A stretch of DNA of 64,000 bases from positions 5,642,001 to 5,706,000 of the forward strand of contig CATNEN010000039.1 in NCBI GenBank assembly GCA_950097015.1, given 5' to 3'. How positions within the stretch are numbered: the stretch's first letter is position 1; every line of letters starts with the position of its first letter. The translations under genes and the position numbers were made by a program. The DNA is from Macrostomum hystrix. Its lineage: Eukaryota; Animalia; Platyhelminthes. The notes beneath the pieces are model-generated. The model saw only the letters and a program-made list of their open reading frames with translations. It had not been told where the DNA came from and ran no database searches. Positions 28,401 through 52,329 of this stretch are shown here, piece by piece.

Positions 28401-31400
28401 CCAGGACGTGGACTCGTGTTCGCTGGCCGCCATCGTCGACAGAGCTGCGCGGCTTGAGCTGGTGAGCCACGCGACTACAGCCTCATCAGCTGCGGTGTCA
28501 GTGGAAGACAGACGGCTGAGCCAGCTGGAGCAGCAGATGCAGCAGCTGACAGCCAGCGTGCGAGCGGGACCACCCGGAAGAGACAGGCGTCAGAAGGGAC
28601 CCATTAAGTGCTTCAGCTGCGGCGAGCTGGGTCACATCGCTAGGCGGTGCCCAAAGGCGACCGGCATCCGCTGCAGCCGGTGCTCAGGCAAAGGTCACTC
28701 CGCCGCGGTGTGCCCGACACCAACTGGACAGCCGCAGGGAAACTTCTGAGGGTCGGCAGCCTGGGGCCAGCACCGACCCGCTCAAAAGGGGCCCTTAGAT
28801 CAGCGCCTTCAGTCTTCGTGAAGGTGCACTTTGGCAGCGTGTCAGCGCCCGCTCTGCTCGACACCGGCGCGCAAGTTTCGTTGATGGATAAGTCACTGTT
28901 CGACAGATTGCCGTGCAAGATCGACTGCACCGACATCGGTGCGCTGCCGACTGCTGTCGACGGATCCCGGCTGCGCTGCCTAGGCCTGTCAGCAGCGGAT
29001 GTTTCTATCGGCAAGACCATCCGCGTGCGCCATCGCTTCACAGTCGTGGACGGCATCCAGCCCAGCCTGATCATCGGCATGGACTTCATCGGCGAGGTGT
29101 CGCAGGCGATGACCATCGACATTAAAGAAGGCGTCGTTAAGTTTGATAGTACAACTGTGCCTTTCAGCAGCGAGCCGGCTCGAGCAGACTGTCGCCTGGT
29201 ACCGAGTGTCCTGGTGGCGCGTGTGGCGGCAACTACGGAGCTGCCCGCCCGCAGCGAGAAGCTGGTGTGGCTCAAGGTGGATTCCAGCGGCGAGCAGGGA
29301 GTCTTTGAGCCGGCTGAGGACTTCGTGAAGTCCACCGCCATCCTGCCGGCCCGCGTGCTGGCGGTCTCAGATGGCTGCCGCATCCCGGTGAAAATGTGCA
29401 ACCTGGCAGAGGAGCCCGTGCTGCTGTACGCCAACAAGGCGGTCGGCACGTTCGAAGGCGCGATGACAGACGAGGACGGTCGCCAGGAGGCGGCCCATGA
29501 GACCCCCGTCGGTTGGAACATCAACGCGGAGCTGCCCGAACGGGATGCTGCGAGGCTGCGACAGCTGCTGGAGCGCAACGAGGACCTGTTCGCAAGGCAC
29601 GAGTACGACCTGGGCACGACGGCGTTGCTGCAACACCAGATCGAGCTGGTGCCCGGAGCGCGGCCACACCGGCAGGTCCAGCGCAGGCTGCCACTGTCTG
29701 TGCGAGGCCAGGTGGACAAAAAGATCGGCCAGATGCTGGACAGCGGCATCATCGAGCCGTCGACATCGCCATGGGCCAGCAACCTGCTGGTAGTCCGCAA
29801 GAAAGACGGCGACATCAGACTGTGCACGGACTGGCGGCAGATCAACGCCTGCACCGTCAGGGACGCGTACCCGCTACCGCACCTGCAGCAGGCCATGGAT
29901 GCGCTTGTCGGATGCTCCTGGTTCTCCACCATCGACTGCCGGCAGGGCTACCACCAGGTGGAGGTGGCGGAGGAGGACCGGCACAAGACGGCCTTCTATT
30001 CGACGCGCGGCCTGATGCAATTCTGCAAGATGGGCTTCGGTATGTGCAACGCCCCGGCGACGTTCCAGCGGCTCATGGAGCTTGTGATGTCTGGCCTGTC
30101 TTGGGAGTCCGTGCTGACTTACATCGACGACATCATTGTCTTCAGCAGGACGTTCGACGACCACTTAGAGAGGCTGGCGGAAGTTTTCAAGCGGTTGCGA
30201 GACGCGGGACTCAAGCTGCACAAGGCCAAGAGCGCGTTCGGTCATCGCCGGGTGCTGTACCTGGGACACCTGATCAGCGAGCAGGGCATCGCACCGGATC
30301 CCGGCAAGGTCGAGGCCATTCGCAGCATGCCCAGCCCAACAACGACCGAGGAGGTGAAGCGGTTCCTCGGAATGTTGGGGTTCTACCGCCGGTTCATCCC
30401 AGGCTTCAGCCAGACGGCGAGGGTCCTGCATGACGTCAGCGTGAAATCGAGGGACTTTGAGTGGAGCAGCGACTGCGAGCGAGCGTTCCACGAGTTGAAA
30501 GATCAGCTGACGACGGCTCCGGTGCTGAGGCTGCCGGATTTCACCAAGCAGTTCGTGCTCAGCTGCGACAGCAGTCAGTTCGCCGTCGGGGCGGTGCTCA
30601 GCCAGCTGCACGGAGACGCCGAGCTGCCTGTGGCGTTCGCCTCGCGCACCCTCAACAAGGCCGAGCGCAACTACTCGGCGACCGACCGTGAGCTGCTGGC
30701 GCTGGTCTGGAGTTTGAAGCACTTCAGGACGTACCTGCTGAGTGTCCCGAACTTCAGAGTCTACTCGGATCACCGGCCACTGCAAGGTCTGCTGACAACG
30801 AAGGACCCCGAAGGTCGGCTGGCGCGATGGCTTTCGACGCTGCAGCAGTTTTCGTTCGAGCTGCTGTACCGACCTGGCAGGGACAACGTCGTGCCGGATG
30901 CGCTGAGCCGGGTGGCCGGCACGCGCCTGCAGCCTCGGTGGGACGACAGCAGCCTACACGAGGAGCAACGGCAAGACCCGCTGCTGAGCAAGGCGTTCCA
31001 GGCGCTGACCGAAGGGGTCGACAGCCTGTCCGATTCATGGGTGGCGCAGGTTCGCGAGCTGCTGGACGGGGCCTCGGTGAGCTCGGCGGGTGTCCTGCTG
31101 GTGGGTGGCCGGCCAGTCATTCCCGGTCACCTGCGGCCACATTTCCTGCAGCAGGCGCACTCGTGCGACCAGAGCGGACACCTCGGCGTCGACAGGACCG
31201 GAGCGAGGCTGTCTGAGCGCTGCTGGTGGCCTGGTCTGCGACGGGACGTCGAGAACTGGGTGGCCAGCTGCGCGGTCTGCCTGGCCAAGAAGAGTCCAAC
31301 CAAGCCGCAGAAAGCGCCGCTGCAGTCGACGTGCCAGCCGACGGCTCCGTGGCAGCTGGTGCAGATCGACATCAAAGGGCCGCTTCCGCGTACGACCGAT

Positions 31401-34985: not shown

Positions 34986-37900
34986 CTAGTTCAGTTCCTT
35001 GTCCACAATGATCTCGCCGAGGCCGGTGCCAGCCCTGGAGAGGCGGGCGATCAGCTCCCTGAGGTCGCGAATGCCGTTGACCTGCTCAGCGAGGAACTCC
35101 GACTCAATGAAGTCCACGAGCTGCGGAGTGCGGTTTGAGTTGGTAAAACTGTCTGATTCTGGGATCATAGCAACGAAATTATAAATGGCGGGGATTTCTA
35201 AGCAGGTGAGATTTGGGGATTTCTCAACCAGATCAGATTGTGGGATCTGGGGATTTCTCAGCCCAGATGAGATTGTGGGATCTGGGGATTTCTCAGCCAG
35301 AAAATATTCAGGGATCTGGTGATTTCTCAACCAGATCAGATTGTGGGATCTGGGAATTTCTCAACCCAGATAAGATTATGGGATCTGGGGATTTCTCAAC
35401 CCAGATAAGATTGTGGGATCTGGGGATTTCTCAACCCAGATGAGATTGTGGGATCTGGGGATTTCTCAACCAGATCAGATTGTGGGATCTGGGGATTTCC
35501 CAACCAGATGAGATTGTGGGATCTGGGGATTTCTCAACCAGATCAGATTGTGGGATTTGGGGATTTCTCAACCCAGATGAGATTGTGGGATCTGGGGATT
35601 TCTCAACCAGATCAGATTGTGGGATCTGGGGATTTCCCAACCAGATGAGATTGTGGGATCTGGGGATTTCTCAACCAGATCAGATTGTGGGATTTGGGGA
35701 TTTCCCAACCAGATGAGATTGTGGGATCTGGGGATTTATCAGTCTGAAAATATTCTGGGATACGGGAATTATCTTGACCCCACGGTTGCGACACAACGGA
35801 ACTTGGCCTCGTCGCGGATCAGAACTGGGTGTCCATGGGATACTTCGCTACTTCGCCCCTCAACTGTTGTCTATTTGTCAGAAAGCTTCTCTGACATCTG
35901 CCCGCACCAATGGGCCACAAAGCATTCTAGAACAAGAAAGCGCCAATGCGCTGCAACTTACATGCGGATCGCTCTCCATATCGGCCCGGTCGCGCAGGCT
36001 GTACAGCTCCTGGGTGATGTTGAGCTCAGCCTCCAGGGCCATCTTGGTGGCGCCCAGGGCGGTGGACCACTCGTACTTGTGGTGCGGCTGCAATTGAATA
36101 GTCGGGAAATCGGCTTTGTTTTGGCACGCATGCAACTAGCTGGCTTAGACCTTTTGTCATGCGACTCACCGTAATGGGCTTTAGCTTGACGTGACCGCCG
36201 CGCTTGTTCAGGTAGTCGATGAGTTTGTGCGCGTGTTCGCGCTCCTCATCGGCGGCCTTCTTGAAGAGCTTCTTGAAGCCGGGCAGGCCAACGCTGGGCC
36301 GGCCGAAGTAGCTGCTCTGCAATTGGTTTCACCAGCGCCGAAGAGTTTGCGAGCATTTTTGCTGATGAGAATCGGGACTTCTCGTCAAAGAGACATACGG
36401 GATTTCAAGATGGGGATCGAGTGTTATCTGGGATTTCAAGATGGGGATCGAGTGTTATCTGGGATTTCAAGATGGGGATCGAGTGTTATCTGGGATTTCA
36501 AGATGGGGATCGGTTGTTATCTGGGATTTCAAGATGGGGATCGGTTGTTATCTGGGATTTCAAGATTGGGATCGGTTGCTATCTGGGATTTCAAGATGGG
36601 GATCGAGTGTTCTCTGGGATTTCAAGATGGGGATCGAGTGTTCTCTGGGATTTCAAGATGGGGATCGAGTGTTCTCTGGGATTTCAAGATGGGGATCGAG
36701 TGTTCTCTGGGATTTCAAGATGGGGATCGAGTGTTATCTGGGATTTCAAGATGGGGATCGAGTGTTATCTGGGATTTCAAGATGGGGATCGAGTGTTCTC
36801 TGGGATTTCAAGATGGGGATCGAGTGTTATCTGGGATTTCAAGATGGGGATCGAGTGTTATCTGGGATTTCAAGATGGGGATCGGTTGTTATCTGGGATT
36901 TCAAGATTGGGATCGGTTGCTATCTGGGATTTCAAGATGGGGATCGAGTGTTCTCTGGGATTTCAAGATGGGGATCGAGTGTTCTCTGGGATTTCAAGAT
37001 GGGGATCGAGTGTTCTCTGGGATTTCAAGATGGGGATCGAGTGTTCTCTGGGATTTCAAGATGGGGATCGAGTGTTATCTGGGATTTCAAGATGGGGATC
37101 GAGTGTTATCTGGGATTTCAAGATGGGGATCGAGTGTTCTCTGGGATTTCAAGATGGGGATCGAGTGTTATCTGGGATTTCAAGATGGGGATCGGTTGTT
37201 ATCTGGGATTTCAAGATGGGGATCGGTTGTTATCTGGGATTTCAAGATGGGGATCGGTTGCTATCTGGGATTTCAAGATGGGGGATCGAGTGTTCACTGG
37301 GATTTCAAGATGGGGATCGAGTGTTATCTGGGATTTCAAGATGGGGATCGAGTGTTATCTGGGATTTCAAGATGGGGATCGAGTGTTATCTGGGATTTCA
37401 AGATGGGGATCGGTTGTTATCTGGGATTTCAAGATGGGGATCGGTTGTTATCTGGGATTTCAAGATTGGGATCGGTTGCTATCTGGGATTTCAAGATGGG
37501 GGATCGAGTGTTCTCTGGGATTTCAAGATGGGGATCGAGTGTTCTCTGGGATTTCAAGATGGGGATCGAGTGTTCTCTGGGATTTCAAGATGGGGATCGG
37601 TTGCTATCTGGGATTTCAAGATGGGGGATCGAGTGTTCTCTGGGATTTCAAGATGGGGATCGAGTGTTATCTGGGATTTCAAGATGGGGATCGAGTGTTA
37701 TCTGGGATTTCAAGATGGGGATCGAGTGTTCTCTGGGATTTCAAGATGGGGATGGAGTGTTATCTGGGATTTCAAGATGGGGATCGAGTGTTCTCTGGGA
37801 TTTCAAGATGGGGATCGAGTGTTCTCTGGGATTTCAAGATGGGGATCGAGTGTTCTCTGGGATTTCAAGATGGGGATCGAGTGTTATCTGGGATTTCAAG

Positions 37901-40542
37901 ATGGGGATCGAGTGTTCTCTGGGATTTCAAGATGGGGATCGAGTGTTATCTGGGATTTCAAGATGGGGATCGAGTGTTCTCTGGGATTTCAAGATGGGGA
38001 TCGAGTGTTCTCTGGGATTTCAAGATGGGGATCGAGTGTTCTCTGGGATTTCAAGATGGGGATCGAGTGTTCTCTGGGATTTCAAGATGGGGATAGAGTG
38101 TTCTCTGGAATTTCAAGATGGGGATCGAGTGTTCTCTGGGATTTCAAGATGGGGATCGAGTGTTATCTGGGATTTCAAGATGGGGATCGAGTGTTCTCTG
38201 GGATTTCAAGATGGGGATCGAGTGTTCTCTGGGATTTCAAGATGGGGATCGAGTGTTTTCTGGGATTTCAAGATGGGGATCGAGTGTTCTCTGGGATTTC
38301 AAGATGGGGATCGAGTGTTCTCTGGGATTTCAAGATGGGAATCGAGTGTTATCTGGGATTTCAAGATCGGGATCGAGTGTTATCTGGGATTTCAAGATGG
38401 GGGCTGCGGCTGTGCTGTCGGCTGCACATCAAACCCAATCGGGGCAGTTTTAATCCATGATTATTTATTTCAAATTTTGATAGCCAGTTCTGGTGGGCTC
38501 AGTGTTGTTCGAGTGTGCATTTGAATATGTGGTTGAGGTATTAAAAGTACAATTGAAAACATGAATCCAACAGCTCGAGATAGACAAGTCTTACCAGGGC
38601 CTCATAGATGTACATGGCGTTGAACTCCCGATTAATCTGATCGTTGATCTTGGCCTCCGAGGTGATGCCCAAACGCATGCGGATGTCTGAGAGTTTTTGG
38701 AGGCTGAGCTAATGAGTCGTCAAATAAAAAGCAGAGGCTTAAGGCGGTGAACAAGAGTATGCTCAACCTGATAGAATCAACCTGAATAGACTCAATCTGA
38801 ATAGACTCAATCTGTATAAACTCAATCTAAATAGACTCAATCTGAATAGACTCAATCTGAATAGACTCAATCTGAATAGACTCAATCTGTATAGACTCAA
38901 TCTAAATAGACTCAATCTGAATAGACTCAATCTGAATAGACTCAATCTGAATAGACTCAATCTGAATAGACTCAATCTGAATAGACTCAATCTGAATAGA
39001 CTCAATCTGTATAGACTCAATCTAAATAGACTAAATCTGAATAGACTCAATTTGAATAGGCTCAATCTGAATAGACTCAATCTGAATTGACTCAATTTGA
39101 ATAGACTCAATTTGAATAGACTCAATTGGAATAGACTCAATCTGAATAGACTCAATCTAAATAGACTCAATCTGAATAGACTCAATCTGTATAGACTCAA
39201 TCTAAATAGACTCAATCTGAATAGACTCAATTTGAATAGGCTCAATCTGAATAGACTCAATCTGAATTGACTCAATTTGAATAGACTCAATCTGAATAGA
39301 CTCAATTTGAATAGACTCAATTTGAATAAACTCAATCTGAAGAGACTCAATTTGAATAGACTCAATCTGAATAAACTCAATCTGAATAGACTCAATCTAA
39401 ATAGACTCAATCTGAATAGACTCAATCTGTATAGACTCAATCTAAATAGACTCAATCTGAATAGACTCAATTTGAATAGGCTCAATCTGAATAGACTCAA
39501 TCTGAATTGACTCAATTTGAATAGACTCAATCTGAATAGACTCAATTTGAATAGGCTCAATCTGAATAGACTCAATCTGAATAGACTCAATTGGAATAGA
39601 CTCAATCTGAAGAGACTCAATTTGAATAGGCTCAATCTGAATAGACTCATTCTGAATAGACTCAATCTGAATAGACTCATTCTGAATAGACTCAATCTGA
39701 ATAGACTCAATTGGAATAGACTCAATCTGAAGAGACTCAATTTGAATAGGCTCAATCTGAATAGACTCATTCTGAATAGACTCATTCTGAATAGACTCAT
39801 TCTGAATAGACTCATTCTGAATAGACTCAAGCTAAATAGACTCATTCTGAATAGACTCATTCTGAATAGACTCATTCTGAATAGACTCATTCTGAATAGA
39901 CTCAAGCTAAATAGACTCATTCTGAATAGACTCAATCTGAATAGACTCAATTGGAATAGACTCAATCTGAATAGACTCAATCTGAATAGACTCAATTGGA
40001 ATAGACTCAATCTGAACAGACTCAATCTGAATAGACTCAATCTGAACAGACTCAATCTGAATAGACTCAATCTGAATAGGCTCAATCTGAATAGACTCAA
40101 TCTGAATAGACTCAATCTGAATAGACTCAATCTGAATAGACTCAATCTGAATAGACTCAATTTGAATAGGCTCAATCTGAATAGACTCAATCTGAATAGA
40201 CTCAATTGGAATAGACTCAATCTGAAGAGACTCAATTTGAATAGGCTCAATCTGAATAGACTCATTCTGAATAGACTCAAGCTAAATAGACTCATTCTGA
40301 ATAGACTCAATCTGAATAGACTCAATCTGAACAGACTCAATCTGAATAGACTCAACCTGAATAGACTCAAACTGAATTATAGACTCAATCTAAATAGACT
40401 CAATCTGAATAGACTCAATCTGAATAGACTCAATCTGAATAGACTCAATCTCTCACTCACTGAGGCCCTCATCGTCGCCCTGCTGCATGGAGATGACGAC
40501 CAGGTGCAGCAAAATGGCTGCCAGAAGCGAGAATCGAGCCAT
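34986..40542 (-). CDS. Ferritin (H-type) with N-terminal signal peptide; exons 40542-40461, 38686-38595, 36316-36170, 36087-35962, 35120-34986; about 193 aa
   Basis: Spliced product MARFSLLAAILLHLVVIS...EAKINDQINREFNAMYIY...ADEEREHAHKLIDYLNKRGG...ALEAE...DPHLVDFIESEFLAEQV...GLGEIIVDKEL. All introns are GT-AG and phase-consistent. An alternative in-frame exon 1/2 junction is also possible. Confidence 0.92.
35205..35740. repeat. 34/35-bp minisatellite (CCAGATCAGATTGTGGGATCTGGGGATTTCTCAA), alternating as a 69-bp dimer; ferritin intron 4
   Basis: Visible periodicity; ORF translations repeat every 23 aa (69 nt). Confidence 0.93.
36399..38402. repeat. 31-bp minisatellite (GGGATTTCAAGATGGGGATCGAGTGTTATCT), about 64 copies; ferritin intron 2
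   Basis: Visible periodicity. Confidence 0.97.
38764..40451. repeat. 15-bp minisatellite (CTCAATCTGAATAGA), about 112 copies; ferritin intron 1
   Basis: Visible periodicity. Confidence 0.97.
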
Positions 40543-41028
40543 GGAGTTGGCCTTGCTTTGTATTGCTTGCCGTATAGCAAAAAAGTTTAAACCAGAATTC
40601 AGAAGCGGGTCTCTCACCTGGCTGAAGAAAGGTTTCTGCGCTGACTCTTTACAGAGAGAGTTGACGCACGCGAGGTCACCAGGCCCTGACAACCACCCCA
40701 GGCCCATGAGATATCTGACCGCGACTTCTTATCTCACCTTTCAGCAAGCTTTGAAAATCAGCTGCTTGCAGCGAAGCCAGCAAAGCTAAGCGCATTCGGA
40801 GCCTAGCAGTCCGGTTATCATTCTCGAGCGAACTTTGATTTTGCTGACGACTTTCTTCTCAGAAGAAGAATTTCACAATCTTGTCTCAATCGTCACCAGC
40901 TGTGCCATGTAGAGATTGCCGCTGAGTTAACGATCTCAAGTTTTGCCGTCTAATGGAAACCTTGTTTGCCTGCATAGTAACAGGAAATTAAAGTTCCAGG
41001 TGTCACTGGGATTTGAGGGGATTTTTAA

Positions 41029-41548
41029 GCCATTGCTGACTCTGGGAATTGAGGATTCTTAAGCGATTGCTGACTCTGGGAATTGGGGATTCTTAAGCCA
41101 TTGCTGACTCTGGGAATTGGGGATTCTTTAGCCATTGCTGACTCTGGGAATTGGGGATTCTTAAGCCATTGCTGACTCTGGGAATTGGGGATTCTTAAGC
41201 CATTGCTGACTCTGGGAATTGGGGATTCTTAAGCCATTGCTGACTCTGGGATTTGGGGATTCTTATGACATTGCTGACTCTGGGAATTGGGGATTCTTAA
41301 GCGATTGCTGACTCTGGGAATTGGGGATTCTTTAGCCATTGCTGATTCTGGGAATTGGGGATTCTTTAGCCATTGCTGACTCTGGGAATTGGGGATTCTT
41401 AAGCCATTGCTGACTCTGGGAATTGGGGATTTTTATGCCGTTGCTGACTCTGGGAATTGGGGATTCTTTAGCGATTGCTGACTCTGGGCATTGGGGATTC
41501 TTTAGCCATCGCAGACACTGGGAATTGGGGATTCTTAAGCCATCGCAG
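41029..41548. repeat. 34-bp minisatellite (GCCATTGCTGACTCTGGGAATTGGGGATTCTTAA), about 15 copies
   Basis: Visible periodicity. Confidence 0.95.
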
Positions 41549-41798
41549 TCTCGGGTATTTTAGTACTTTGAACTGTAAAAACAATAGAGCGCTTTAAAAT
41601 CTAAGAATATTTCATCAGACTGTCATTAAATAACGATTGTTTTATTTATTCATTTATATTTTTTCAAGAACAGAACATCTTCGAGCAATGCTAAGTGGCG
41701 ACTGTTTCTGTCTAGTTTTGTATTTATAGCAGAGGAAAATATGATCCCAGTTCGGTAGGCAACCGTACGGAAACGACTCAAGTGCTGACTCAGACCTT

Positions 41799-42681
41799 CT
41801 AGTTCTCAGCTACCGCATACGGCAGCCTGCGGGCGTCGATGTGGCAGGCGGGCGCGGGCACATTCTCGTACGGATGCAGGCACTGTCTGATGAAGGAAAA
41901 CCGGTTGCACAGGCTGCAGCAGCATTTCAGCATCCAGCGAGACAGCGAGCTCCTGTCCGCATTGCAGTGGAGCTCGCGCAGCAGGCTCTGTCTCGAATCC
42001 CGCTTCTGTCGGAGCAGCGTCTGCCCTGACGAAGGCCGAAAAAACGGCACCGACCAGGGAGAGTCGTCCACGTCATCTAGCGACCGGTTCTGCTGCCTGC
42101 GCAGGTTTCTCTCGAGCTCTCGGTACATTCTCACTGCAGTCAGTTGCGAATGGAATGCCACCTTCAATTAGGGGCGCCACCTGGGATTTGGGGGTCCGCC
42201 ACCTTGGAATGGGGTACACGCCACCTTGGATTGGGGTACACGCCACCTTGGATTGGGGTACACGCCACCTTGGATTGGGGGGTCCACCACCTTGGATTGG
42301 GGGGTCCACCACCTTGGATTGGGGGGTCCGCCACCTTGGATTGGGGGGTCCGCAACCATGGATTGGGGGGTCCGCCACCTTGGATTGGGGGGTCCGCCAC
42401 CTTGGATTGGGGGGTCCGCCACCTTGGATTGGGGGGTCCGCCACCTTGGAATGGGGTACACGCCACCTTGGATTGGGGGGTCCGCCACCTTGGATTGGGG
42501 GGTCCGCCACCTTGGATTTAGGGGGGCACCAAGTTTCTGATTGAGGCTAACTTTGAGAGCTCTTACTTCCAATAGTATATCCGTGTCGCACAGCGGGGTG
42601 AATTCCGTTTCGATGCCTACAAAAGCTGGCTAAGTAGGTGCCGTACAGATCCTCGTTGCACACCGGACCCTCGTTGCCCAG
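41799..42681 (-). CDS. Insulin-like peptide module (B-chain exon 42681-42567; C/A-chain exon 42133-41799)
   Basis: B: VCNEDLYGTYLASFC. RQKR processing site. A: CCCSLCNRFSFIRQC, fitting CC-x3-C-x8-C. Phase-1 intron in the C-peptide, as in insulin-family genes. Confidence 0.88.
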
Positions 42682-45600
42682 CTGTAGTTTTCGCGATAAG
42701 GAGGCGTAAAATAAGCAATTAACGCTTTAATTGCTAGCCTTGCTAACGCCGGCTTAAACAAAGTTTTTATAATTAAATTTTCACTTACGAGGTATGACGG
42801 ATCCTCGACTGGAATGTTTGTGAAAAAATGTGGATGTTTACAAATGTTTTACATTTACTATTGTCAATGACTCCCTAAGATTGATAATGATACTCAAGTA
42901 TTGTTAATGACTCTCAAGTATTGTTAATGACTCTCAAGGATTGTTAATGACTCTCAAGGATTGTTAATGATTCTCAAGGATTGTTAATGAGTCTCAAGGA
43001 TTGTTAATGAGTCTCAAGGATTGTTAATGAGTCTCAAGGATTGTTAATGATTCTCAAGGATTGTTAATGAGTCTCAAGGATTGTTAATGAGTCTCAAGGA
43101 TTGTTAATGAGTCTCAAGGATTGTTAATGAGTCTCAAGGATTGTTAATGAGTCTCAAGGATTGTTAATGAGTCTCAAGGATTGTTAATGAGTCTCAAGGA
43201 TTGTTAATGATTCTCAAGGATTGTTAATGATTCTCAAAGATTGTTAATTATTCTCAAGGATTGTTAATGATTCTCAAAGATTGTTAATGATTCTCAAGGA
43301 TTGTTAATGATTCTCAAGGATTGTTAATGATTCTCAAGGATTGTTAATTATTCTCAAAGATTGTTAATTATTCTCAAAGACTGTTAATTATTCTCAAGGA
43401 TTGTTAATGATTCTCAAGGATTGTTAATGATTCTCAAGGATTGTTAATGATTCTCAAGGATTGTTAATTATTCTCAAAGATTGTTAATTATTCTCAAGGA
43501 TTGTTAATGATTCTCAAGGATTGTTAATGATTCTCAAGGATTGTTAATGACTCTCAAGGATTGTTAATGACCCCCAAGGATTGATAATGACTCCCAAGAT
43601 TGTCATATTTCTTACGCATGACAAGGTGCATCTCAGCCACGAATCCCTTGTGAGTCTGCACAGTGCGCTCCGCGCTCGAATGCCTATCGGTGACGAAGAC
43701 AATGGTGATGTGATTTGATCTGCCTTTAACGAAGTTGCTCAGACCGTTTACAGTCATCCACGGATATTTTGGCCGATTCTCGTCGCTGCCATAGAAGCGC
43801 TTCAGCAATTTTCCCGATGTGCCGTTGCCTTCGTAAACAGCCACGTAGTCTTTGTTGCTGGCCGTGCGGAACTCCGGGAACGTGAGCAGCACCGTGTGAA
43901 TGCTGGACGTGGAGATTACCCACTGGCAGCGCATGCCCATTGTGTAGGGCTCCGAGCCGTAATTCAAATGGCTGCGCAGTCGCGCGCTGCACCTGTCGCC
44001 AGGAGTCTTGGCCGTCACATCTCCGCATCCTGTGGGAAGAATTGAATCAATCTGAGTCAGGTGTATAGGTTTTCTAGGTTTTCTAGACTCGAAGTTCTGG
44101 CGAAGGTCTGGTGAGAATTTCGATGGACCAGATGATCCTTCAAAGAGTCCTTAGTAATTTTTTTGTTGCGCTTTCACTGATCGCATAGGTATAATTGTGC
44201 GCCGGGGGGGGAGTGGCAGAGCGGTTAACCTGTTCGCCATTCGCACCGAGGCCTCTGAGGTCGATTCCGCGACGAGGCCACATTAATCTGGGTCTTTTCA
44301 TGTAGTTTAAGCCCCTGAGGACCAACCTGAGATAGTACACAGTGAGAGTGTACGCAGTGTACGCAGTGAGAGTGTACATAGTGAGACGGGCAGCATCTAC
44401 ACACTGTTTTGTGTGCTCAGGAGTCAGCGGAATAGCCAGAATCGTTTCCTCGCTGGCTGCGGGTCGACTGTCATCAAATGCTGTGCCCTCCTGCAGATAT
44501 TATTATTACTATTATCGTTGTGTGGAGGATCGCTGAAATTCTCAGAGCTGCCTTCACAATGTGCATGGAGCAAATTTAGTGAAAGCGATAAGTACTTTGA
44601 GCCGTTGTGCAATGCATAATTCAAGAGACAGTTCGTTAAAAGCTTGCCCCCAGGTTTTCCGTAGGCCACCAGTTCGCACAGCGTCAGTGACACCTGGCGA
44701 GACAGTGCGGTCACGGTGATCTCAGTGCCTGGCAGGTTGCAGACAAAAGTTTTATTATCGAAGGCGGTGCCGTTCACCACGCTGACGCAGACTGTGATTT
44801 CGATGGCCAAGCTAAAGTGGCGCGTCCACTGTCGGCAGTCCCGCTTAGAGTACAAGGACACCTCCTCGAAGATGAAGGTGGACTGCACCTTGGCCTTCCA
44901 CCAGGGCCGATCGCTGACGGTCGTCTGGGCGCACCTGCCCAGCTGCTGGCTCTCGCTGTGAGCAAAGTCGAGGGCGTTCTTGCAGTAGTCCATGGGCAGC
45001 AGGCGGCTGGACTGGCTGCAGCTAATGAGGTTGACGCGCTCTGCCTCCGAGAAAGTAAGTTGATCAAGGAGTTAGTTAATTAATTCACGCATTTAGCAAA
45101 GGTAAAGTTTCATTCCAGTTTACCTTTTACATCGAACAACAGATAAATGCGGCCATGCATATGACAGGGAATGGTTCCCATTTCCAAGCGGGCCGAGCAG
45201 CGATACCCCGGTATCTCGTCGCTAGTGTAATGGTTTCTGGCCGTGGTGAACAGAACCATCCTTCGAAGGGACTGTGACATTTTCAACGGCAGTGAAAATT
45301 TATCTAAAATTAGGCGAAAATTTTCGCGCAAACTTTTAGTCTGATTTGAGAATGAGCTGTCAGCCCAAGAGCAGCTCTAGGAGCAGAATTACTGACCGGA
45401 GTGCCGGTGATGCAACACGTGAATCAGCTTGTTTTCATAGTAGATTCTCACGTACAGGTCGTCAGCCAGTTGCGTCTGTATTCGGGTCATCGTCGGCCCA
45501 TTGGGCTGATCTCTGTATTGAAAGAGTCCGCGCACCTTCAGATCCAGGATTCGGTCACCCGGTTCGAACTCGGTGCTTGGGCGCAGAGGTGCTGGCAGAG

Positions 45601-48600
45601 AAAAAAAGTTTTTATTTATCCAATGAACTGCTAATTTGATGCATACTAACACCTGAGAAAACTACTCACTACTGTCGCTAATAAATTTTCCAAACACCTG
45701 CAGGTCGCACATGTGCATGTAGGGATACTTCGAATCCGCTGCAGTCACAATCATTCCCTTCATTGCACTGTTGCACTCAAACTTCACCCAGGTCCCATCG
45801 AACGCCCCAACCCTGCTGCACGGCGTCCGGTAGTTGGACTCAACTCGCAAGCTCAAGTTCAGCGGGTTGTTCAGATGCACCTCAGTGACATAGAATGTAA
45901 CATCGCTGAGCCAGTTAGTCAGCGGCTGAAGCCAGGATCCGACGCCCCGGCTGATGTAGCTCTCAGTCGGGCAGGTGTCCTTCTGGAACAGGCGCACAGG
46001 CCGCGCGTTGCCAGGCTGGTAGCACCGGTAGTAGTAGGCGGCTGCGCCCTCCGGTTCCGGGCGACAGAGCTTCATTGGAACGCGCTCTGTGGTTAGGTTG
46101 CAATTAGCTAATTAAAACTATCTTACTAAGGATGCTATCAGACTAAAAGCTAAAACGATTGTTGATTTCAATTAGTTTTGTTGTGAACCAGTTGAAAGAA
46201 TCAGACTCAACAACAACAACAATAATAATAATAATAATAACAATAATTGATGGAGGGCTGCGGGCAATCAATTGGTGACTCAAGACCTGCAGCCAGCGAT
46301 GAGGCTATTTTGCCAATTCTGCTGACTCCTGAGCACACACGAGGTTGGCCCTTAAGGGTGGAAATGGCACCCTTAAGGCCTCGAAGCCTTCTCTCGGCGA
46401 CTGCGAGCTAAAAGAATGTGGTCTCGCCGCGGAATCGAGCTCCCTGCAATGACCTTGGTGCGAGAGGCAAACGCGTTAGACCGCTCTGCCACTCACCTCC
46501 TCTCTTGCACGAAGGTCCCTGTGTTCCTTAGTCCCTGAGACCGAATCAGCGCTGAGACCACGTTCATTTTGGGAGCAGCCATGTAGAGAATGTTAGGGAG
46601 GCTTTCGTGAAATTTTTCTATGATGGCTAGCCTCTAAGGCTAACCTCTGACATTGTACACGATCTACTGCTGCAACACCGATCGATACATGATCGATATA
46701 GAATCGAAGAAACATTTCAGTGAAGTTTTACATTTTTAGTTTTAGGAATGGGTGAGGAGACTGGAGAATCCCAGAGGGCTAAATATCGAAAGTAATCAAA
46801 CTCTTGCAACTTCTCCAAACCTGAGCAATATCAGGTCTTGCGAGCAAACATTTTGGAAGACAACAATTGTGACTCACCGATTGCGCTGTACAGGAATCTG
46901 GAGCCCGGATATGATGGAATCTGCACCGTATAGTTGCCGATCAGTACGCTCAAGTTGAACGTCATGACAGGATTGGGATCGACAGATCCACTCACGATTT
47001 GGTGGAGTGCCAGCTTCAGTCTGTGATTGGCCTTAGTAGGCTTGGGCAACTGATAATCCCAGCTAGAGTCGAGGGCTGAAACACCGATCGATAATTAATC
47101 GATATTGGATCGATTTAAACATGCAGTAAACCCTTTATAAGGAGCTTTTTTGAGCCTCACTAGCCGTCCTGTCAGTGCTCAACCTCCAATTCTGCCCGAT
47201 TGTGTACATTAATGTACATGGCCCACCCGGGCTGGGCTGCGCCTCTCCCAGTTTTCTCGACTGCCTGTCACTTCCACTGTTACGTGACTCTCTTCTCGAG
47301 AATCCCTTCTTTTCATTTGGGAGTGCAGTCAAACATTACTAGAATTGACTTTGGCAAGTCCCTGACGTCAGCTGCTATATAAGAAGTGACGTGGCCCGAT
47401 GAGCGACTGTCAGCTATAAGATAAGCATCTTTCTTTCGCTTCTACTCATCTACGAGTAGAAATTCTTCATTAGAAATTAGAGAAATTTTAGAAATTCTCC
47501 ACCACAAACTCATCGCTTTTACCTGTAAACTCCAAAACTACGAGTCACTTAATTTTTTGCACCCAGCAGGTCAACTGACAGTCTTTGACTGCGCCTAGCT
47601 CTGCACGGCGTTTTCTAGCTGCTCGAAACCCTGAAACTTCATCCCTTCACATAGACCTTTCACATCGAGACAGAAGCGAGACGTTCTTTTATTCAACTCT
47701 GAGTTTGCTGGTCTCAGCAGAATTCTCACACCCCACCGAGAAATCCAAAGGAACCCCACATACACTACCATGAAATACCAAAAAGCCTTCTCACTGAAAG
47801 CCAGTAGGTTTGTTGAGGGTGATTTTTGCGAATTCTGTCTACCCTCATTAGCGAATAAGCTTGCGAGGATCGAGGTGTGCTAATGATGTTTACCCCCATT
47901 AGCCAATGGCTTCCGGAGGTACCACCTTGAAATCCCATACAGAATGCTCAGTCGGACTCACTCGAGAACCTCTTGCAGATGTAGCCGATTCGCTGCTCGC
48001 AGCCGTAGCTGGTCCAGACCTGGTTGTCCGGCTTAAGCTGGACACAGCCCTTGTCGGCCAAATCTGGCAGCCAACGCCGCTTGCTGCCTGCTGGACCGGT
48101 GGTGTCCACCGTCCAGCTGTAGGCGCCGATGCCAGCCGTCCGGTGCATGCCAATCCAGTGCGGCGCCATGCCGATGCCCGCGGTGGACAGGAAGTTCATC
48201 TCGGACTCATCCTCCGCGTAAAATAGGTCGCTGTCCAGCCGCCAGCACTGCTGCAGGGCCTCTGTCCAATTCAGGCCTGGACGGCTGATTTGCAGGTAGC
48301 AGCGGGGGCCAGCTAAGATGCTCCGCCGCCTGCCATCGCCACCAGTTGCCGAGCTCTTCAGAGTCCAACTCAGCCAGCCATTCGGACACCCAGCTGGAGA
48401 TTGAGAACAATTTGGAAGGCTACTCAATCTGCTGAGTATTGACTGTTGCAATGAAGTATTAACTTTAACTATGATTTCATCATGTTTTATTTGTTTTATG
48501 TCTTTAGAATAAAACTTACTGGCCTCGGAACTCGGAGTGGCACCGATCAGCTCGTTGAAGTTTCCGCTACCCGGTAAGTCCTCTGAGTACACCTTGATAA

Positions 48601-51101
48601 GCAGCTTTGAGCTGGTATTAGTTGCTGCACCAATCAGCGTGATCGATTTGGCAGTGAATATAATCTGCCGATCCTCGTTTATAAAGTTGATCAACGAATT
48701 CAAAACCTTTGCCGTGCTCTCGGCTGCAGTGAGAAATGAAACTGTAAAGCTTTGTAGAGGGATCAGCGGATCAACAGAAGAAACACTACAACTATCGATC
48801 GTAAATACGATTAGTTACAATAATTCTTTTTTATTGAAAAGTAAAAATCGGAAATTATCGAAAAGTTCTGAAAAAGACTTATCAACTTTTTCTGTCCCAA
48901 TTTTAGCCAGGCTAAGTTCAGAAAACGACCTCTTTCAGAATACAGTCATACGCTCGTACAAGTTCTTGTAACAGCCACGTCACTCCCCAGCCTTCTCACT
49001 CCCCAGCCACCTCCCTACCCAGCCACCTCACTCCTCAGCCACCTCACTCCCCAGCAACCTCCCTACCCAGCCACCTCACTCCTCAGCCACCTCACTCCAC
49101 AGCAACCTCACTCCCTAGAAACCCCACGTTGCAAGCTTTCTGGTTCACATTTTTTAATTAACCAGCTCGCTACGTGCACTGCGCATTTCTGTAAACAATT
49201 TACTTCTGAGTCCAAATAACTCATGCTTTGAAGTGTAATAGACCAAATTTAATAAATAAAGTATTTTTGTAAAAATAAGAAAGTTTTCATTTGTAAAAAT
49301 ATTTCTTCTTTCTATAATAAAGCGAAAATTGATTCCGACTTATAATAAAAGTTAAATTCGCGCCGACTCTAAAGATTATTTTGTTTAAATTACCATATTT
49401 TGCACAAAATTGTAATGCACAATAGAGACAAAAAAATTAAGGGTATAAACGTCGTCGTCGTTCAATAATAAAAATGAAGTTCAGAAACGAGTTTTTTAAT
49501 TAGGAGAGAAAATATTCGTGTACCTAAAGTGTTGCAATATTTTTTATAAGAATAGAGGTTGAACATACGAAGAATATAATGAGACATCATAAAATAAAAC
49601 TGAACTAAATAAAAACAAAATAAGAAATAAGAAATAATATAAGAAATATATCTACCAAATATACACTTAGAGCTATTGTGAATAAGATATACATATATAC
49701 AACAATAAGAGATAAGAGAAACATTGTTGTCTTATATACTCAGATATTAATAAAACCAGATTCTAAAAATATATTTTATTATAAATTGTGAAATACATTT
49801 TTAAAGTGACGATAATATTAAAGCAATAAAATAAATAAAAAATAAATAAATAATAAAAACTAAAAATAATAAAAGACCCCTAACCAAAAATTTAGTGGCA
49901 TCATTAGAATAAAATATCTTTAAAGTGACAATTAAAGAGAGAAGCAAAAGGACAGAGGTTTACGCACCATAGTCGATTTTATAGACAGAGGCGAAGCTAC
50001 TATTCCCGCAGCCAGTAATGAGAGGCTCCAAGCAGGTGCCGTTGCACTCGGTGTCAGTTTTCTTTTCAAAAGCGTCCATATTGTAGATACACACGCACTC
50101 ATGCTGCCTGCGCATGCCAAAGAAAGGCGACAAAGCGTCCCTCTTGCAGGTCAGTGCGCAGGCTATTTTTGTGAAGTTCGTTCCCATCAGTTTGTAGTAG
50201 CTATCAAAGAAGTACAATTCGGCGAAGCAGCCCATCGGACTGAATTCTGAAGTTCATTATTTTAGATTTTTAGTTTATTTATAATTAATTTTCCCACTGA
50301 AAGCCAGCAGGCTTTTTACGTGTGTTTTGTGTGAAATCTGTCTAACCTCATAACCCAATAAGCTTGTGGGGCTTGAGGTGTGTGAATGATGCCTACCCTC
50401 ATTAACCAATAGGCTTGCGTAGGTTGAGGTGGGCGAATTCTGTCTACCCTCATTAGCCAATCGGCTTGCGGGCGTTTAGGTGTGTCTTAGGTGTCTTTAG
50501 GTGTGTATGATGTCCACCCCTATTGGCCAATAGCTTGCTAGGCTTGCTTGAGGTGTTAGGATTGTTTTACTTACGATAGTCAGTGTTTGTGATCGTGTCG
50601 ACAATTTATCAACTTACTCTCGATGATGACATACACAGACAAAGCTCTGCTTCCACCGCACTTCTCGCTCCGATCCAAGCTGCATGTGATGTTGCAATCG
50701 GACTCTGGCAGTGATTCCAACGCGCCGTAGGAGTTGCCGCAATGGCAGGAGTCGCCATGCATGCCGAAGAACAGGTTTCCATGATCCATGCAGTACATGT
50801 AGCACCTGGCCCTACTCATGTTGGCCCTGATTGTTAAGTTGGCCAATGCGGTGGCCATACGCTCGTAGCAACCGACATACCTGTACTCTGGTGTGTTTTT
50901 CGCGGTATCGAATGAGGAGTTTAGCGAGTGTAGATGATCAAAACACTTTCTATTGGACTTTAAGACGTCTATTCACTCACGTGCTCGCATGTCGAACTCG
51001 GTGAAATTGGTGACCAAAGGAACTGTTTGATTGTCAATCAAAACCGACAGAGCAGACACGAAAAGTCCGGCCTGAACAATGGCCAACAAAGCGAGCCGCA
51101 T
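41799..51101 (-). CDS. Predicted secreted multidomain protein: SP-WSC-WSC-linker-C-type lectin-linker-FTP-like-linker-FTP-like-CUB-insulin-like peptide, about 1206 aa, 15 exons
   Basis: Exons 51101-50981, 50887-50618, 50246-49968, 48723-48520, 48393-47962, 47413-47340, 47049-46878, 46086-45670, 45591-45397, 45303-45124, 45040-44648, 44029-43616, 42808-42789, 42681-42567, 42133-41799. Total 3621 nt in one frame, using 13 GT-AG introns and one inferred GC-AG intron. Confidence 0.7.
42175..42525. repeat. 22-bp G-rich minisatellite (CCACCTTGGATTGGGGGGTCCG) in the B/A-chain intron
   Basis: Visible periodicity. Confidence 0.93.
42860..43600. repeat. 20-bp minisatellite (TTGTTAATGATTCTCAAGGA), about 37 copies
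   Basis: Visible periodicity; fills the intron after the CUB exon. Confidence 0.96.
43616..44029 (-). CDS. CUB domain exon
   Basis: CG...LNYGSEPYTMGMRCQWVI...VLLTFPEF...DYVAVYEG...LLKRFYG...SNHITIVFVTD...KGFVA; phase 1-1. Confidence 0.9.
44204..44515 (+). mobile_element. tRNA-derived SINE
   Basis: GAGTGGCAGAGCGG A-box, GGTCGATTCC B-box, GTGTGCTCAGGAGTCAGC body, (TAT)n tail. Confidence 0.78.
44648..45040 (-). CDS. F-type lectin (fucolectin/discoidin)-like domain exon 2
   Basis: SQSS...KNALD...CAQT..SDRPWWKAKV...VSLYSKRDC...LTLCELVAYG follows the FTP pattern. Confidence 0.78.
45670..46086 (-). CDS. Divergent F-type lectin/discoidin-like domain exon 1
   Basis: C-terminal FECNSAMKGMIVTA...MHMCDLQVFG matches the FTP G.YV...L.LCEV.V.G end; begins ERV like the second copy. 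Confidence 0.6.
46209..46500 (-). mobile_element. tRNA-derived SINE (inverted relative to the 44204 copy)
   Basis: Reverse complement carries GTGAGTGGCAGAGCGGTCTAACGCG, GCTCGATTCCGCGGCGAG, GTGTGCTCAGGAGTCAGC and a (TTA/TTG)n tail. Confidence 0.78.
47962..48393 (-). CDS. C-type lectin-like domain exon
   Basis: CPNGW...RCY...NWTEALQQC...EMNFL...WIGM...YSW...GCVQL...WTSYGC...YICK. Confidence 0.9.
48985..49120. repeat. Short C-rich tandem repeat (CCCCAGCCACCTCACT-like)
   Basis: Visible repeated units. Confidence 0.8.
49968..50887 (-). CDS. Two WSC domain exons (50887-50618 and 50246-49968)
   Basis: YVGCY...MSRARCYMYC...FFGM...CHCG...CNITC...KCGG...SVY, and MGCF...CALTC...FFGM...ECVC...CNGTC...GCG...SVY. 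Confidence 0.9.
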
Positions 51102-52329
51102 TTTGCTGCCACTGACTAGCTATTTATTGCACCTGCAATCACGGAAAGTTTGCACTTTCAGATTAACACTTCTGATTAGCTCAATTAGATTGTTACAGAT
51201 AGGTTGGTAAAAAGTTATTATAATAAATTTATCTATCAATATTTATTCATTCAGTCGGGACGACCTGCTGTTTGTTGTTGCGAGCTTTCTGGCCATAGAC
51301 AGAGAAAACTTTTCTAAAAATTGGTAGCAGACTGAACTAAAGTATGTACACAGCCAAGTCGAAAATGAAGACGCGCAGCACCACCTCGACTCGTCGAAAG
51401 CTTGGTCACAAATGTCAAAATCAAGTAAGACCAACATACGCTAACCTGACTGCCAGCGGCCTCGCCGCACCTGCCAATTTGTCGCTTGGGACAAAATTTC
51501 CTTGCTTATATTTAACGCTAAGAAAGTGAAAAGCATTTGGACCGAAGAACTAGTGGGCTTAGTGCGCACTAGAAGTAACTAAAGGGGAGCTGTACCGAGC
51601 AAGGACTTAAAACATAGACAATGATTAAGTTAACAAAGGGGCGTGCAGGATGCGTAGTCTATGGGCTAAAAGGACGATAGAAGGCGAAACAATTAAAGTG
51701 CAGTGAAACGTACTGATCAACTAATCGGTGAGCAAGAAAGAAAAGAGGAGAGTCGAAGGAAACGACGAGAAGGACTTCTGGAGGGAGCATTTCCGACAAG
51801 GCACATTATATGATGTAATGGTCTCGGAATTAAAGTAGTCTGTACCACAGAATACAGATTCCTCGCTCTGAAGGCGCCCATTAAACGTCTCTAAAATAAG
51901 CAATATACTCGTATATAATACCCTCAAAAAACGTTTCTTTGGTCATGAAGTCGAGGAATCGTTTCTTGGCCGAGGCGCAGCCGACTAACTAACGGCAGCC
52001 CGCCCTCTGCTGTTGTCTATGGTCGAATTCCATAGATTTGCACAGCGGGCGGGCCGCAAAACGCGTTTCACGGCCGCGACGCGCCTCGACGTTTTACCTC
52101 GTTTCAGCCCTCTGCAGCGTATCAATATTGGTATATTCTATACTATACTCACGTACTGGGCAAACATGCAAAAAGGTGTGTACATCTGTCCTGACTTTCT
52201 CATCGTCAGACAGTTTACACTCTCACTGGGCTTTCAAAAAACCCCCCTATTTATCTTTTTCTGCATCTCCCAAAATATTCAAAATCGCCAGGAAAATTTA
52301 GGACACGAGCTAAAATTTTAGCGAACTTG

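What the first reader, a model, noticed from the sequence alone, without database searches (positions are those of the whole stretch)
41799..51101. Insulin-like prohormone fused to the end of a WSC / C-type lectin / F-type lectin / CUB array
Seen: 15 minus-strand exons splice into one 3621-nt frame. It starts with a signal peptide (MRLALLAIVQAGLFVSALS), passes two WSC, one C-type lectin, two FTP-like and one CUB domain, and ends in insulin B-C-A chains. I see no ATG or signal-peptide exon between the CUB exon and the B chain; a phase-correcting micro-exon joins them instead. Established: insulin/IGF/relaxin precursors are normally small, with the signal peptide close to the B chain. Inference: a roughly 1200-aa secreted protein that ties an insulin-family ligand to glycan- or matrix-binding modules, which could localise or gate insulin signalling on mucus, matrix or microbial surfaces. 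I do not know a described protein with this architecture, but I could not search.
Basis: partly seen in the sequence, partly recalled or inferred. Interest (0 to 1): 0.93.

Follow-up and report, generated by a model that had tools for sequence, protein, structure and literature searches.

The report
Lectin-CUB protein with insulin-like tail
A flatworm (Macrostomum) gene really does splice two WSC, a C-type lectin, F-type-lectin-like and CUB modules onto a C-terminal piece that carries the cysteine framework of flatworm insulin-like peptides. That piece is too divergent to call a working insulin, so this is an unusual mosaic protein rather than a proven tethered hormone.

Summary
Spliced contigs from four runs of one study join 41666-42133 | 42567-42681 | 42789-42808 | 43616-44029 | five further exons up to 47075, all at GT-AG sites (one GC-AG), and run about 1.4 kb further 5'. 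The CUB > 20-nt micro-exon > B > A splicing is therefore real, and the frame stays open.

Pfam confirms two WSC domains, Lectin_C and CUB. One exon matches solved F-type lectins. There is no ATG between the CUB exon and the B exon, so the tail can only be made as part of the large protein.

The tail's A part has C-x13-CCC-x2-C-x8-C. This is the framework of the seven canonical insulin-like genes of this genome and of schistosome ILPs, with a phase-1 intron and a conserved RQKR site before it. Three things count against it:
- the B part has C-x12-C with no Gly;
- Pfam Insulin and PDB searches miss it, although they find the canonical genes;
- the folds were uninformative.

The only relative is a 151-aa M. 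lignano fragment that starts at the same exon boundary.

Verdict: a real mosaic gene. The tail is probably (about 0.6) derived from an insulin-like peptide, and signalling is untested. The same reader also noted this tail separately (s1-844588).

The parts
50981..51101 (-). Exon 1: ATG at 51101, hydrophobic N-terminus MRLALLAIVQAGLFVSALS (probable signal peptide), donor GTGAGT, phase 0>1
   Evidence: Read. Inferred: no signal-peptide predictor was available, and this exon was not in the laid stretch.
50618..50887 (-). Exon 2: WSC domain 1, phase 1-1
   Evidence: Pfam WSC 2.8e-13; splice sites read; frame.
49968..50246 (-). Exon 3: WSC domain 2, phase 1-1
   Evidence: Pfam WSC 4e-6, 27.4 bits against a cut-off of 27.8; splice sites read.
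48944..48991 (-).
   Evidence: It is the only 48-nt phase 1-1 AG..GT candidate. It lies in a 16/48-nt tandem repeat, has a weak acceptor and donor, and the frame is intact without it.
48520..48723 (-). Exon with no recognised domain (linker), phase 1-1
   Evidence: no Pfam match. Inferred from splice sites.
47962..48393 (-). C-type lectin exon, phase 1-1
   Evidence: Pfam Lectin_C 7.6e-10. Its 3' end at 47962 is the sequence the RNA contigs carry next to 47075.
46878..47075 (-). Exon with no recognised domain, phase 1-1, seen in RNA
   Evidence: contig pieces; no Pfam match.
45670..46086 (-). Weakly FTP-like exon (divergent), phase 1-1, seen in RNA
   Evidence: BLASTP E 0.002 to the F-type lectin exon over the C-terminal half, in register. 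No Pfam or PDB hit. The AF2 model was all-beta but pLDDT 44.
45397..45591 (-). Exon with no recognised domain, seen in RNA
45124..45303 (-). Exon with no recognised domain, seen in RNA
44648..45040 (-). F-type lectin (FTP) exon, followed by a GC-AG intron (44030-44647)
   Evidence: PDB 3cqo FBP32 3.7e-10 and 1k12 eel agglutinin 1e-3; joint; sites. At least 122 similar single-exon copies exist in the genome.
43616..44029 (-). CUB exon, three Cys (C1-C2 pair plus one odd Cys), phase 1-1
   Evidence: Pfam CUB 4.6e-11; RNA contigs; translation.
42789..42808 (-). 20-nt micro-exon (L-EDPSYL) that changes the phase from 1 to 0
   Evidence: Joints 42808>43616 and 42681>42789 appear in all four runs. 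Clean AG and GTAAGT sites.
42567..42681 (-). B-like exon: LGNEGPVCNEDLYGTYLASFCRHRNG..., Cys-x12-Cys, no ATG, phase 0>1
   Evidence: It is 50% identical to the start of the M. lignano fragment P0001.
41799..42133 (-). Last coding exon: conserved connecting segment with RR and RQKR, then C-x13-CCC-x2-C-x8-C, a 26-aa extension with one more Cys, and the stop at 41799-41801
   Evidence: Alignment to P0001 with all Cys conserved. HMM and hhalign tests.
41666..41798 (-). 3' UTR. The contigs of three runs end at 41666-41668, next to a genomic A-run.
42860..43603 (.). 20-nt minisatellite (37 copies) that fills the CUB-to-micro-exon intron and leaves no room for a signal exon
42175..42518 (.). 22-nt minisatellite (15.6 copies) in the B-A intron

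Best explanation
This is one real gene of a Macrostomum flatworm.

Shown: its mRNA joins, through phase 1-1 exons, a probable signal peptide, two WSC domains, a C-type lectin domain, an F-type lectin domain, a weaker FTP-like one and a CUB domain. A 20-nt phase-correcting micro-exon then links these to two terminal exons.

Inferred, about 0.6: those two exons descend from a flatworm eight-cysteine insulin-like peptide gene that lost its own signal exon and was captured by exon shuffling.

Inferred consequences:
- No start codon and no basic cleavage site lie between CUB and the B-like segment, so the B part stays attached to the large protein.
- The conserved RQKR (RRKR in M. lignano) in the connecting segment could let a furin-type convertase cut the chain. 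The A-like part would then be held only by disulfides, giving a tethered two-chain insulin-like knot.
- Hallmarks of receptor-active insulins are lost: C-x11-C, the Gly after the first B Cys, and the aromatic residue before the last A Cys. The connecting segment is as conserved as the 'chains'. The module has most likely been re-used as a disulfide-rich C-terminal domain, for example for folding, pairing or linking to the odd Cys of the CUB, and not as a classical hormone.
For: Splicing. Single contigs in three runs, plus a fourth with the same joints, span A, B, micro-exon, CUB and five more exons with canonical boundaries. The 20-nt micro-exon means that single 31-mers span three exons, so this is not an assembly chimera. 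The frame is open and the phases are consistent. The A exon exists only once in the 220-Mb assembly, so a retrocopy is excluded.

Domains.

No independent start. No ATG lies in 42567-43615 on the minus strand.

Tail.
- The framework C-x13-CCC-x2-C-x8-C equals that of all seven canonical ILP A exons of this genome, C-x10-12-CCC-x2-C-x8-C. It also matches the published schistosome signature CCCX(2)CX(8)C (PMC5391603).
- An HMM of the seven A chains scores the window 11.7 bits, with 16 of 5000 shuffles as good. It scores P0001 14.5 bits, with 4 of 5000 (null2 off). hhalign gives P 9e-4.
- In 2,000,000 composition-preserving shuffles of P0001 the full order (B pair, pre-A Cys, CCC..C.{8}C) never arose. 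CCC..C.{8}C alone arose 48 times.
- The intron between the B and A parts is phase 1. So are the best GTGAG donors in the C-peptide of three canonical genes.
- All nine Cys, RR and R-x-K-R are conserved in the M. lignano orthologue, which begins exactly at the B-exon boundary without a Met.
Against: - Pfam Insulin finds nothing in the exons or in the contiguous M. lignano B-C-A fragment. A genome-wide PF00049 search returns three other loci and not this one.
- Profile or phmmer searches of PDB sequences with the tail find no insulin-family chain. A three-sequence profile of canonical A exons from the same genome finds IGF-II at 9e-6, plus insulin, bombyxin and DILPs.
- The B part shows no similarity to canonical B chains. 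Its spacing is x12, and it has Asn/Ser where canonical chains have Gly.
- With HMMER's composition correction on, the A score falls to 0.2 bits.
- The spacing tolerances in the shuffle test were chosen after seeing the data.
- AF2 (pLDDT 36) and ESMFold give no confident fold.
- All RNA comes from one study whose runs are not on record as RNA.
- The fused architecture could not be checked in M. lignano.
Confidence: 0.6

Rival explanations
1. The gene and its splicing are real, but the tail is an unrelated cysteine-rich C-terminal domain. Its cysteine pattern resembles the insulin A chain by chance or by convergence.
For: No sequence method that detects the canonical ILPs of this genome detects the tail. 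There is no B-chain similarity, and the spacing is wrong. The composition-corrected HMM score is about 0. The connecting segment is as conserved as the 'chains', which is unlike a discarded C-peptide. UniProt's automatic name for the orthologue is a DBF4-type zinc finger, which shows that the Cys/His pattern also fits other motifs loosely.
Against: The ordered framework (two Cys on a predicted helix, a pre-A Cys, CCC-x2-C-x8-C) did not arise in 2,000,000 shuffles. The phase-1 intron and the conserved R-x-K-R sit where an ILP gene has them. The genome has many ILP genes and very active exon shuffling, which gives a source and a mechanism.
Confidence: 0.28
2. One reading: the tail is a working insulin-receptor ligand, and the lectin/CUB modules localise or gate it on glycans, mucus or matrix.
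For: The architecture is confirmed. The tail has an ILP-like framework and a conserved convertase site. The modules upstream are carbohydrate- or protein-binding types.
Against: Positions that, to my knowledge, matter for the insulin fold and for receptor binding are changed in both species: B spacing x12, no Gly after the first B Cys, and Gln where TyrA19 sits. The F-type lectin exon has Gln where the fucose-binding His sits (alignment). No binding or expression data exist, and the complex prediction gave no answer.
Confidence: 0.12
3. Conjoined-gene artefact: two neighbouring genes (a lectin-CUB gene and a small ILP gene) are occasionally read through and spliced together, and the normal products are separate.
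For: The CUB exon, if unspliced, would run to a stop at 43554-43556. Contigs drop rare isoforms, so alternatives cannot be excluded.
Against: No ATG and no signal exon are available for the B exon, and the B exon itself has no ATG in any frame. The intron is filled by a minisatellite. The fused form is the only form assembled in all four runs. The M. lignano model also lacks a Met at the B exon.
Confidence: 0.03

Closest known systems
Flatworm eight-cysteine insulin-like peptides: schistosome SjILP/SmILP, planarian ilp-1, and the seven canonical ILP genes found here on contigs C2, C7 and C38
   Same: The A-part framework is C...CCC-x2-C-x8-C. Two Cys sit on a predicted helix upstream. A phase-1 intron lies in the connecting segment, which also has basic sites. 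The module sits at the C-terminus of a secreted protein.
   Different: Those are small precursors of about 100-150 aa (132-137 aa in the schistosome and Fasciola papers) in which the B chain is the first module, CG-x2-L with C-x11-C, and they are recognised by Pfam Insulin. Here the module follows about 1040 aa of other domains. It has C-x12-C without Gly, one extra C-terminal Cys and a conserved connecting segment, and no profile recognises it.
Insulin-like growth factors (single-chain members with C, D and E extensions)
   Same: There is an extension after the last A-chain Cys, and the module may stay in one piece or be only partly processed. The canonical A exons of this genome align best to IGF-II.
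   Different: IGFs are still small stand-alone precursors with their own signal peptide. No lectin or CUB modules are attached.
Mosaic extracellular proteins built from phase 1-1 exons: F-type lectins such as FBP32 (3cqo), and CUB or C-type-lectin proteins
   Same: Exons 1-11 are all phase 1-1, each is roughly one module, and the FTP module is present in at least 122 exon copies in this genome.
   Different: To my knowledge, and in the literature searches run here, none of these carries an insulin-like module. The insulin fold is normally not a shuffled domain.
C-terminal cystine-knot (CTCK) domains of mucins and von Willebrand factor (a functional analogy only)
   Same: It is a small disulfide-rich module at the very C-terminus of a large secreted glycan-binding protein. 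The odd Cys count (9 in the tail, 3 in the CUB) would allow an inter-domain or inter-chain disulfide.
   Different: The cysteine pattern and presumed fold differ, and dimerisation is pure inference here.

Membership tests
Insulin/IGF/relaxin superfamily (Pfam PF00049) | A-chain signature CC-x3-C-x8-C (in flatworms CCC-x2-C-x8-C) | tested here: met
   KCCCSLCNRFSFIRQC in the window and KCCCGSCSRLFFIVQC in the M. lignano orthologue. The same framework is in seven canonical ILP exons and in schistosome ILPs (PMC5391603).
Insulin/IGF/relaxin superfamily (Pfam PF00049) | B chain with Cys-Gly and C-x11-C spacing | tested here: not met
   VCNEDLYGTYLASFC has 12 residues between the Cys, and Asn (Ser in M. 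lignano) follows the first Cys. All six canonical B exons have CG and x11.
Insulin/IGF/relaxin superfamily (Pfam PF00049) | Score above the Pfam gathering threshold | tested here: not met
   No hit for either exon or for the contiguous B-C-A fragment P0001, even at E 10. The genome-wide PF00049 search finds three other loci only. The spliced window protein itself was not searched, because the joined step was left out.
Insulin/IGF/relaxin superfamily (Pfam PF00049) | Detectable sequence similarity to solved insulin-family chains | tested here: not met
   No insulin-family chain at E up to 10. Positive control: canonical A exons hit IGF-II at 9e-6, plus insulin, bombyxin and DILP2/5.
Insulin/IGF/relaxin superfamily (Pfam PF00049) | Similarity to this genome's own ILP A chains beyond composition | tested here: inconclusive
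   HMM 11.7 bits with 16 of 5000 shuffles as good, but only with the composition correction off; 0.2 bits with it on. hhalign P 9e-4, probability 23%.
Insulin/IGF/relaxin superfamily (Pfam PF00049) | Phase-1 intron inside the connecting (C) peptide | tested here: met
   The window's B exon ends in phase 1, 18 residues after the second Cys. The best GTGAG donors of three canonical genes are phase 1, 16-32 residues after it (those donors are inferred, not RNA-verified).
Insulin/IGF/relaxin superfamily (Pfam PF00049) | Small precursor with a signal peptide directly before the B chain | tested here: not met
   About 1040 aa of other domains precede the B part, and there is no ATG between CUB and B. 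This is the unusual feature itself.
Insulin/IGF/relaxin superfamily (Pfam PF00049) | Insulin fold (three helices, three conserved disulfides) | tested here: inconclusive
   AF2 on P0001 with a three-row alignment gave pLDDT 36, with a helix predicted between the two B Cys. The ESM Atlas model has pLDDT 0.34. The two-chain complex job gave no answer.
Insulin/IGF/relaxin superfamily (Pfam PF00049) | Binds and activates an insulin-type receptor | not testable with these tools
   Needs a binding or signalling assay.
WSC domain (PF01822) | Profile match above the cut-off | tested here: met
   First copy 50.3 bits (cut-off 27.8). Second copy 27.4 bits, just under the cut-off but full length.
C-type lectin (PF00059) | Profile match above the cut-off | tested here: met
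   39.9 bits against 22.6, profile positions 3-107 of 107. Sugar-binding residues were not examined.
CUB (PF00431) | Profile match above the cut-off | tested here: met
   43.5 bits against 21.4. Only the first Cys pair is present, plus one odd Cys.
F-type lectin / FTP domain | Sequence similarity to solved F-type lectins | tested here: met
   Exon 44649-45038: 3cqo 3.7e-10 and 1k12 1e-3. Exon 45671-46084: only a pairwise E of 0.002 to the first, no PDB or Pfam hit, low-confidence all-beta model.
F-type lectin / FTP domain | Fucose-binding His / Arg / Arg triad (as I recall it from eel agglutinin) | tested here: not met
   In the alignment to 1k12, the His of GSCTHSS is Gln (GRCAQTT), and the CCGER stretch is replaced or gapped.

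The most novel reading that the evidence does not exclude
The protein is a matrix- or glycan-anchored insulin-family ligand. The lectin/WSC/CUB array fixes it to mucus, extracellular matrix or a microbial surface. Furin cutting at RQKR matures the tethered two-chain insulin-like head. That head then engages a Macrostomum insulin-type or Venus-kinase-type receptor only where the anchor binds. This would be the first insulin-fold module known to act as a domain of a mosaic protein.
Probability: 0.12. Interest if true: 0.85.

Novelty: new variant of a known kind. Interest (0 to 1): 0.6.

Why it matters
As far as I know, and as far as the paper searches here show, insulin-superfamily modules occur only as small stand-alone prohormones. 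They are not counted among the domains that exon shuffling moves around.

Here RNA shows a module with the flatworm ILP cysteine framework welded onto a lectin/CUB mosaic protein, with no way to be made on its own. If the homology holds, the insulin fold can be recruited as a domain. That would give a natural example of a covalently tethered insulin-like head, of interest both for how hormone families are born and die and for how ligands are localised.

If the homology fails, the case is a useful warning that the A-chain signature alone can arise in unrelated cysteine-rich tails.

Tried and rejected
Joined step. Exons were searched one by one by reference. The naturally contiguous M. lignano fragment P0001 served as proxy for B-C-A. 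Frame continuity was checked by phase bookkeeping. In one search a script tested candidate introns of three canonical ILP loci for an open frame across the junction; nothing joined was printed, saved or searched.

No result:
- Rfam on the window and tRNA scan.
- ESM Atlas, twice.
- AF2 of P0001 (pLDDT 36) and of exon 45671-46084 (pLDDT 44). No fold search was run on such models.
- Complex prediction of the B exon with the A part: no answer, score 0.02. This is evidence neither for nor against.
- The search for homologous proteins with P0001 found only itself; with the CUB open frame it found nothing.

Rejected or failed:
- The genome hit L002 (E 0.001) to the A exon is an out-of-frame reading of a coiled-coil (liprin-like, by eye) exon, so it is chance.
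- A DNA pattern for CCC-x2-C-x8-C in the genome was swamped by (TGC)n repeats: 14,505 matches.
- A brute-force exon enumeration timed out.
- P0002 and P0003 are repeat-rich proteins and are not relatives.

Full report
WHAT IS THERE

The window is a piece of a 220-Mb, 42-contig assembly (contig C39:5642001-5706000). The only relative of the tail in 1.8 billion representative proteins is a Macrostomum lignano entry. Earlier notes of this scan call the genome M. hystrix, and I did not verify the species.

The neighbourhood holds ordinary animal genes and repeats:
- a BTB-Kelch gene;
- exons for laminin-EGF, LamG, FN3 and galaxin-like modules;
- a Ty3/gypsy element.

THE TRANSCRIPT

Four runs of one study hold 0.24-0.37 of the sampled words of 41700-51200. 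That is about the exon share of the stretch. Their kind is not on record, but their contigs are spliced, so they are cDNA.

Laid on 41500-47450, X1, X2 and X3 each give one contig covering:
- 41666-42133
- 42567-42681
- the 20-nt piece 42789-42808
- 43616-44028
- 44647-45040
- 45124-45303
- 45397-45591
- 45670-46086
- 46878-47075

The contigs run on 5'. X4 gives the same joints at lower depth.

Every skipped stretch has GT..AG on the minus strand. The exception is 44030-44647, which is GC..AG once the 2-nt ambiguity is resolved. With a 20-nt micro-exon, single 31-mers must span three exons, so the CUB > micro-exon > B path cannot be an assembly chimera of two transcripts. The A exon occurs once in the genome, which excludes a retrocopy.

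The sequence that follows 47075 in the contigs is the end of the C-type lectin exon at 47962. X1 has 1411 nt beyond 47075. The five upstream exons that I infer from strong splice sites sum to 1306 nt, which leaves a 105-nt leader.

That extra exon (48991-48944) sits in a tandem repeat and has poor splice sites. The frame does not need it, and I regard it as doubtful.

Phase bookkeeping shows an open frame of 3573 nt (1190 aa), or 3621 nt with the extra exon. Exons 1-11 are all phase 1-1, the classic signature of shuffled extracellular modules. The micro-exon converts phase 1 to 0, the B exon goes 0>1, and the last exon starts in phase 1.

THE DOMAINS

- Pfam, exon by exon, gives WSC twice, Lectin_C and CUB.
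- Exon 44649-45038 is an F-type lectin domain (3cqo 3.7e-10, 1k12 1e-3). It has Gln in place of the sugar-binding His.
- This module has at least 122 single-exon copies in the genome.
- Exon 45671-46084 is at best a distant copy.
- Four exons of 59-67 aa have no match.
- The N-terminus looks like a signal peptide by eye. No transmembrane stretch is apparent.

THE TAIL

After the CUB exon comes L-EDPSYL from the micro-exon. The B exon follows with LGNEGPVCNEDLYGTYLASFCRHRNG...

The last exon holds a connecting segment with RR and RQKR. After it comes HC-x13-CCC-SL-C-x8-C, then a 26-aa extension with a ninth Cys.

No ATG lies anywhere on the minus strand between the CUB donor and the end of the B exon. 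A 20-nt minisatellite fills the 807-nt intron. The tail therefore cannot be translated as a separate secreted peptide.

The M. lignano fragment P0001 (151 aa, UniProt A0A1I8I027) is 50% identical. It keeps all nine Cys, RR and R-R-K-R. It starts without a Met exactly at the B-exon boundary, as expected if its gene model is cut off from upstream exons.

IS THE TAIL INSULIN-LIKE?

For:
- The genome has seven canonical ILP genes in clusters on C2 and C7 and a single gene on C38. All have B = CG-x2-L... with C-x11-C, and A = C-x10-12-CCC-x2-C-x8-C.
- Schistosome ILPs are described with CCCX(2)CX(8)C (PMC5391603).
- The window's A part has exactly this framework, including the extra upstream Cys.
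- Against an HMM of the seven A chains it scores 11.7 bits (16 of 5000 shuffles as good), and P0001 scores 14.5 bits (4 of 5000), with the composition correction off. hhalign gives P 9e-4.
- In two million shuffles of P0001, CCC..C.{8}C arose 48 times. The whole ordered framework never arose. The tolerances were set post hoc.
- The B-A intron is phase 1, as are the best donors in three canonical genes.

Against:
- The B spacing is x12, and there is no Gly after the first Cys.
- Gln sits where insulin has TyrA19.
- The B part has no similarity to canonical B chains.
- Pfam Insulin and PDB sequence searches see nothing. A tiny profile of canonical A exons finds IGF-II, insulin, bombyxin and DILPs.
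- With the composition correction on, the HMM score is 0.2 bits.

Structure prediction and the two-chain complex job were uninformative.

I put the odds that the tail descends from an ILP gene at about 0.6.

HOW IT LIKELY WORKS

The protein is secreted. No basic site separates CUB from the B part, so the B part remains part of the large chain. The conserved R-x-K-R could be cut by a furin-type convertase, and the A part would then be held only by disulfides.

The tail has nine Cys and the CUB three. One Cys in each is unpaired by the usual schemes, so a CUB-tail or inter-chain disulfide is possible. This is inference only.

The connecting segment is as conserved as the 'chains', and receptor-relevant positions are changed. 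I therefore think a structural or pairing role is more likely than classical insulin signalling, which I put at about 0.12.

COMPARISON AND NOVELTY

The closest relatives in kind are flatworm eight-cysteine ILPs and IGFs. The difference is that the module is embedded as the last domain of a mosaic lectin/CUB protein. Five literature searches gave no precedent.

I rate it a new variant of a known kind, conditional on the homology. The same reader also noted the tail separately (s1-844588).

LIMITS

- All RNA comes from one study.
- The 5' third of the model is inferred.
- The joined protein was never searched, by rule.
- The fusion could not be checked in M. lignano.

Noticed in passing
window 46276-46500 (intron of the gene); a similar stretch near 44200-44460: A tRNA-like element on the minus strand, with box A/B-like motifs by eye. 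RNA contig depth is very high (up to 286) and many loose ends sit at 46451-46502, as for a dispersed SINE present in many transcripts. ARAGORN calls no tRNA there.
   Followed up: partly
window 40000-40451, 41017-41543, 42175-42518, 42860-43603, 48972-49115, 50328-50485: Six minisatellites (periods 15, 34, 22, 20, 16/48 and 51 nt) lie in the introns of this gene and just downstream of it. Two of them fill the introns that flank the insulin-like exons.
   Followed up: partly
window 44030-44647: A GC-AG intron between the F-type lectin exon and the CUB exon, supported by contigs in four runs.
   Followed up: yes
window 28647-32450 (+): Ty3/gypsy-type retrotransposon ORF of 1268 aa (protease, RT, RNase H, integrase), in a stretch with G+C 0.63-0.65 against about 0.47 around it.
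   Followed up: partly
window 10852-25948 (+): Long open exons with laminin-EGF (9 repeats), laminin G, galaxin-like and 11 or more FN3 modules, probably one or more large matrix or adhesion genes.
   Followed up: no
window 3163-4713 (-): Intronless-looking 517-aa BTB-BACK-Kelch ORF.
   Followed up: no
window 36001-38524 (+): Strong GC skew (0.42) over overlapping long ORFs. One of them has repeated weak BRICHOS-like matches, so this is probably a repetitive coding array.
   Followed up: no
G000 C1, C2, C3, C7, C38, C39: The F-type-lectin-like module exists in at least 122 single-exon copies, many in tight tandem arrays, for example C3:4452970-4462656 and C1:6621051-6637103. This is a large lineage-specific expansion.
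   Followed up: no
L046-L052 (G000 C7:9734388-9740028, C2:6763327-6768370, C38:4888729): Seven canonical eight-cysteine ILP genes: two tandem clusters of three plus one single gene. All have CCC-x2-C-x8-C and an extra Cys 10-12 residues upstream.
   Followed up: partly
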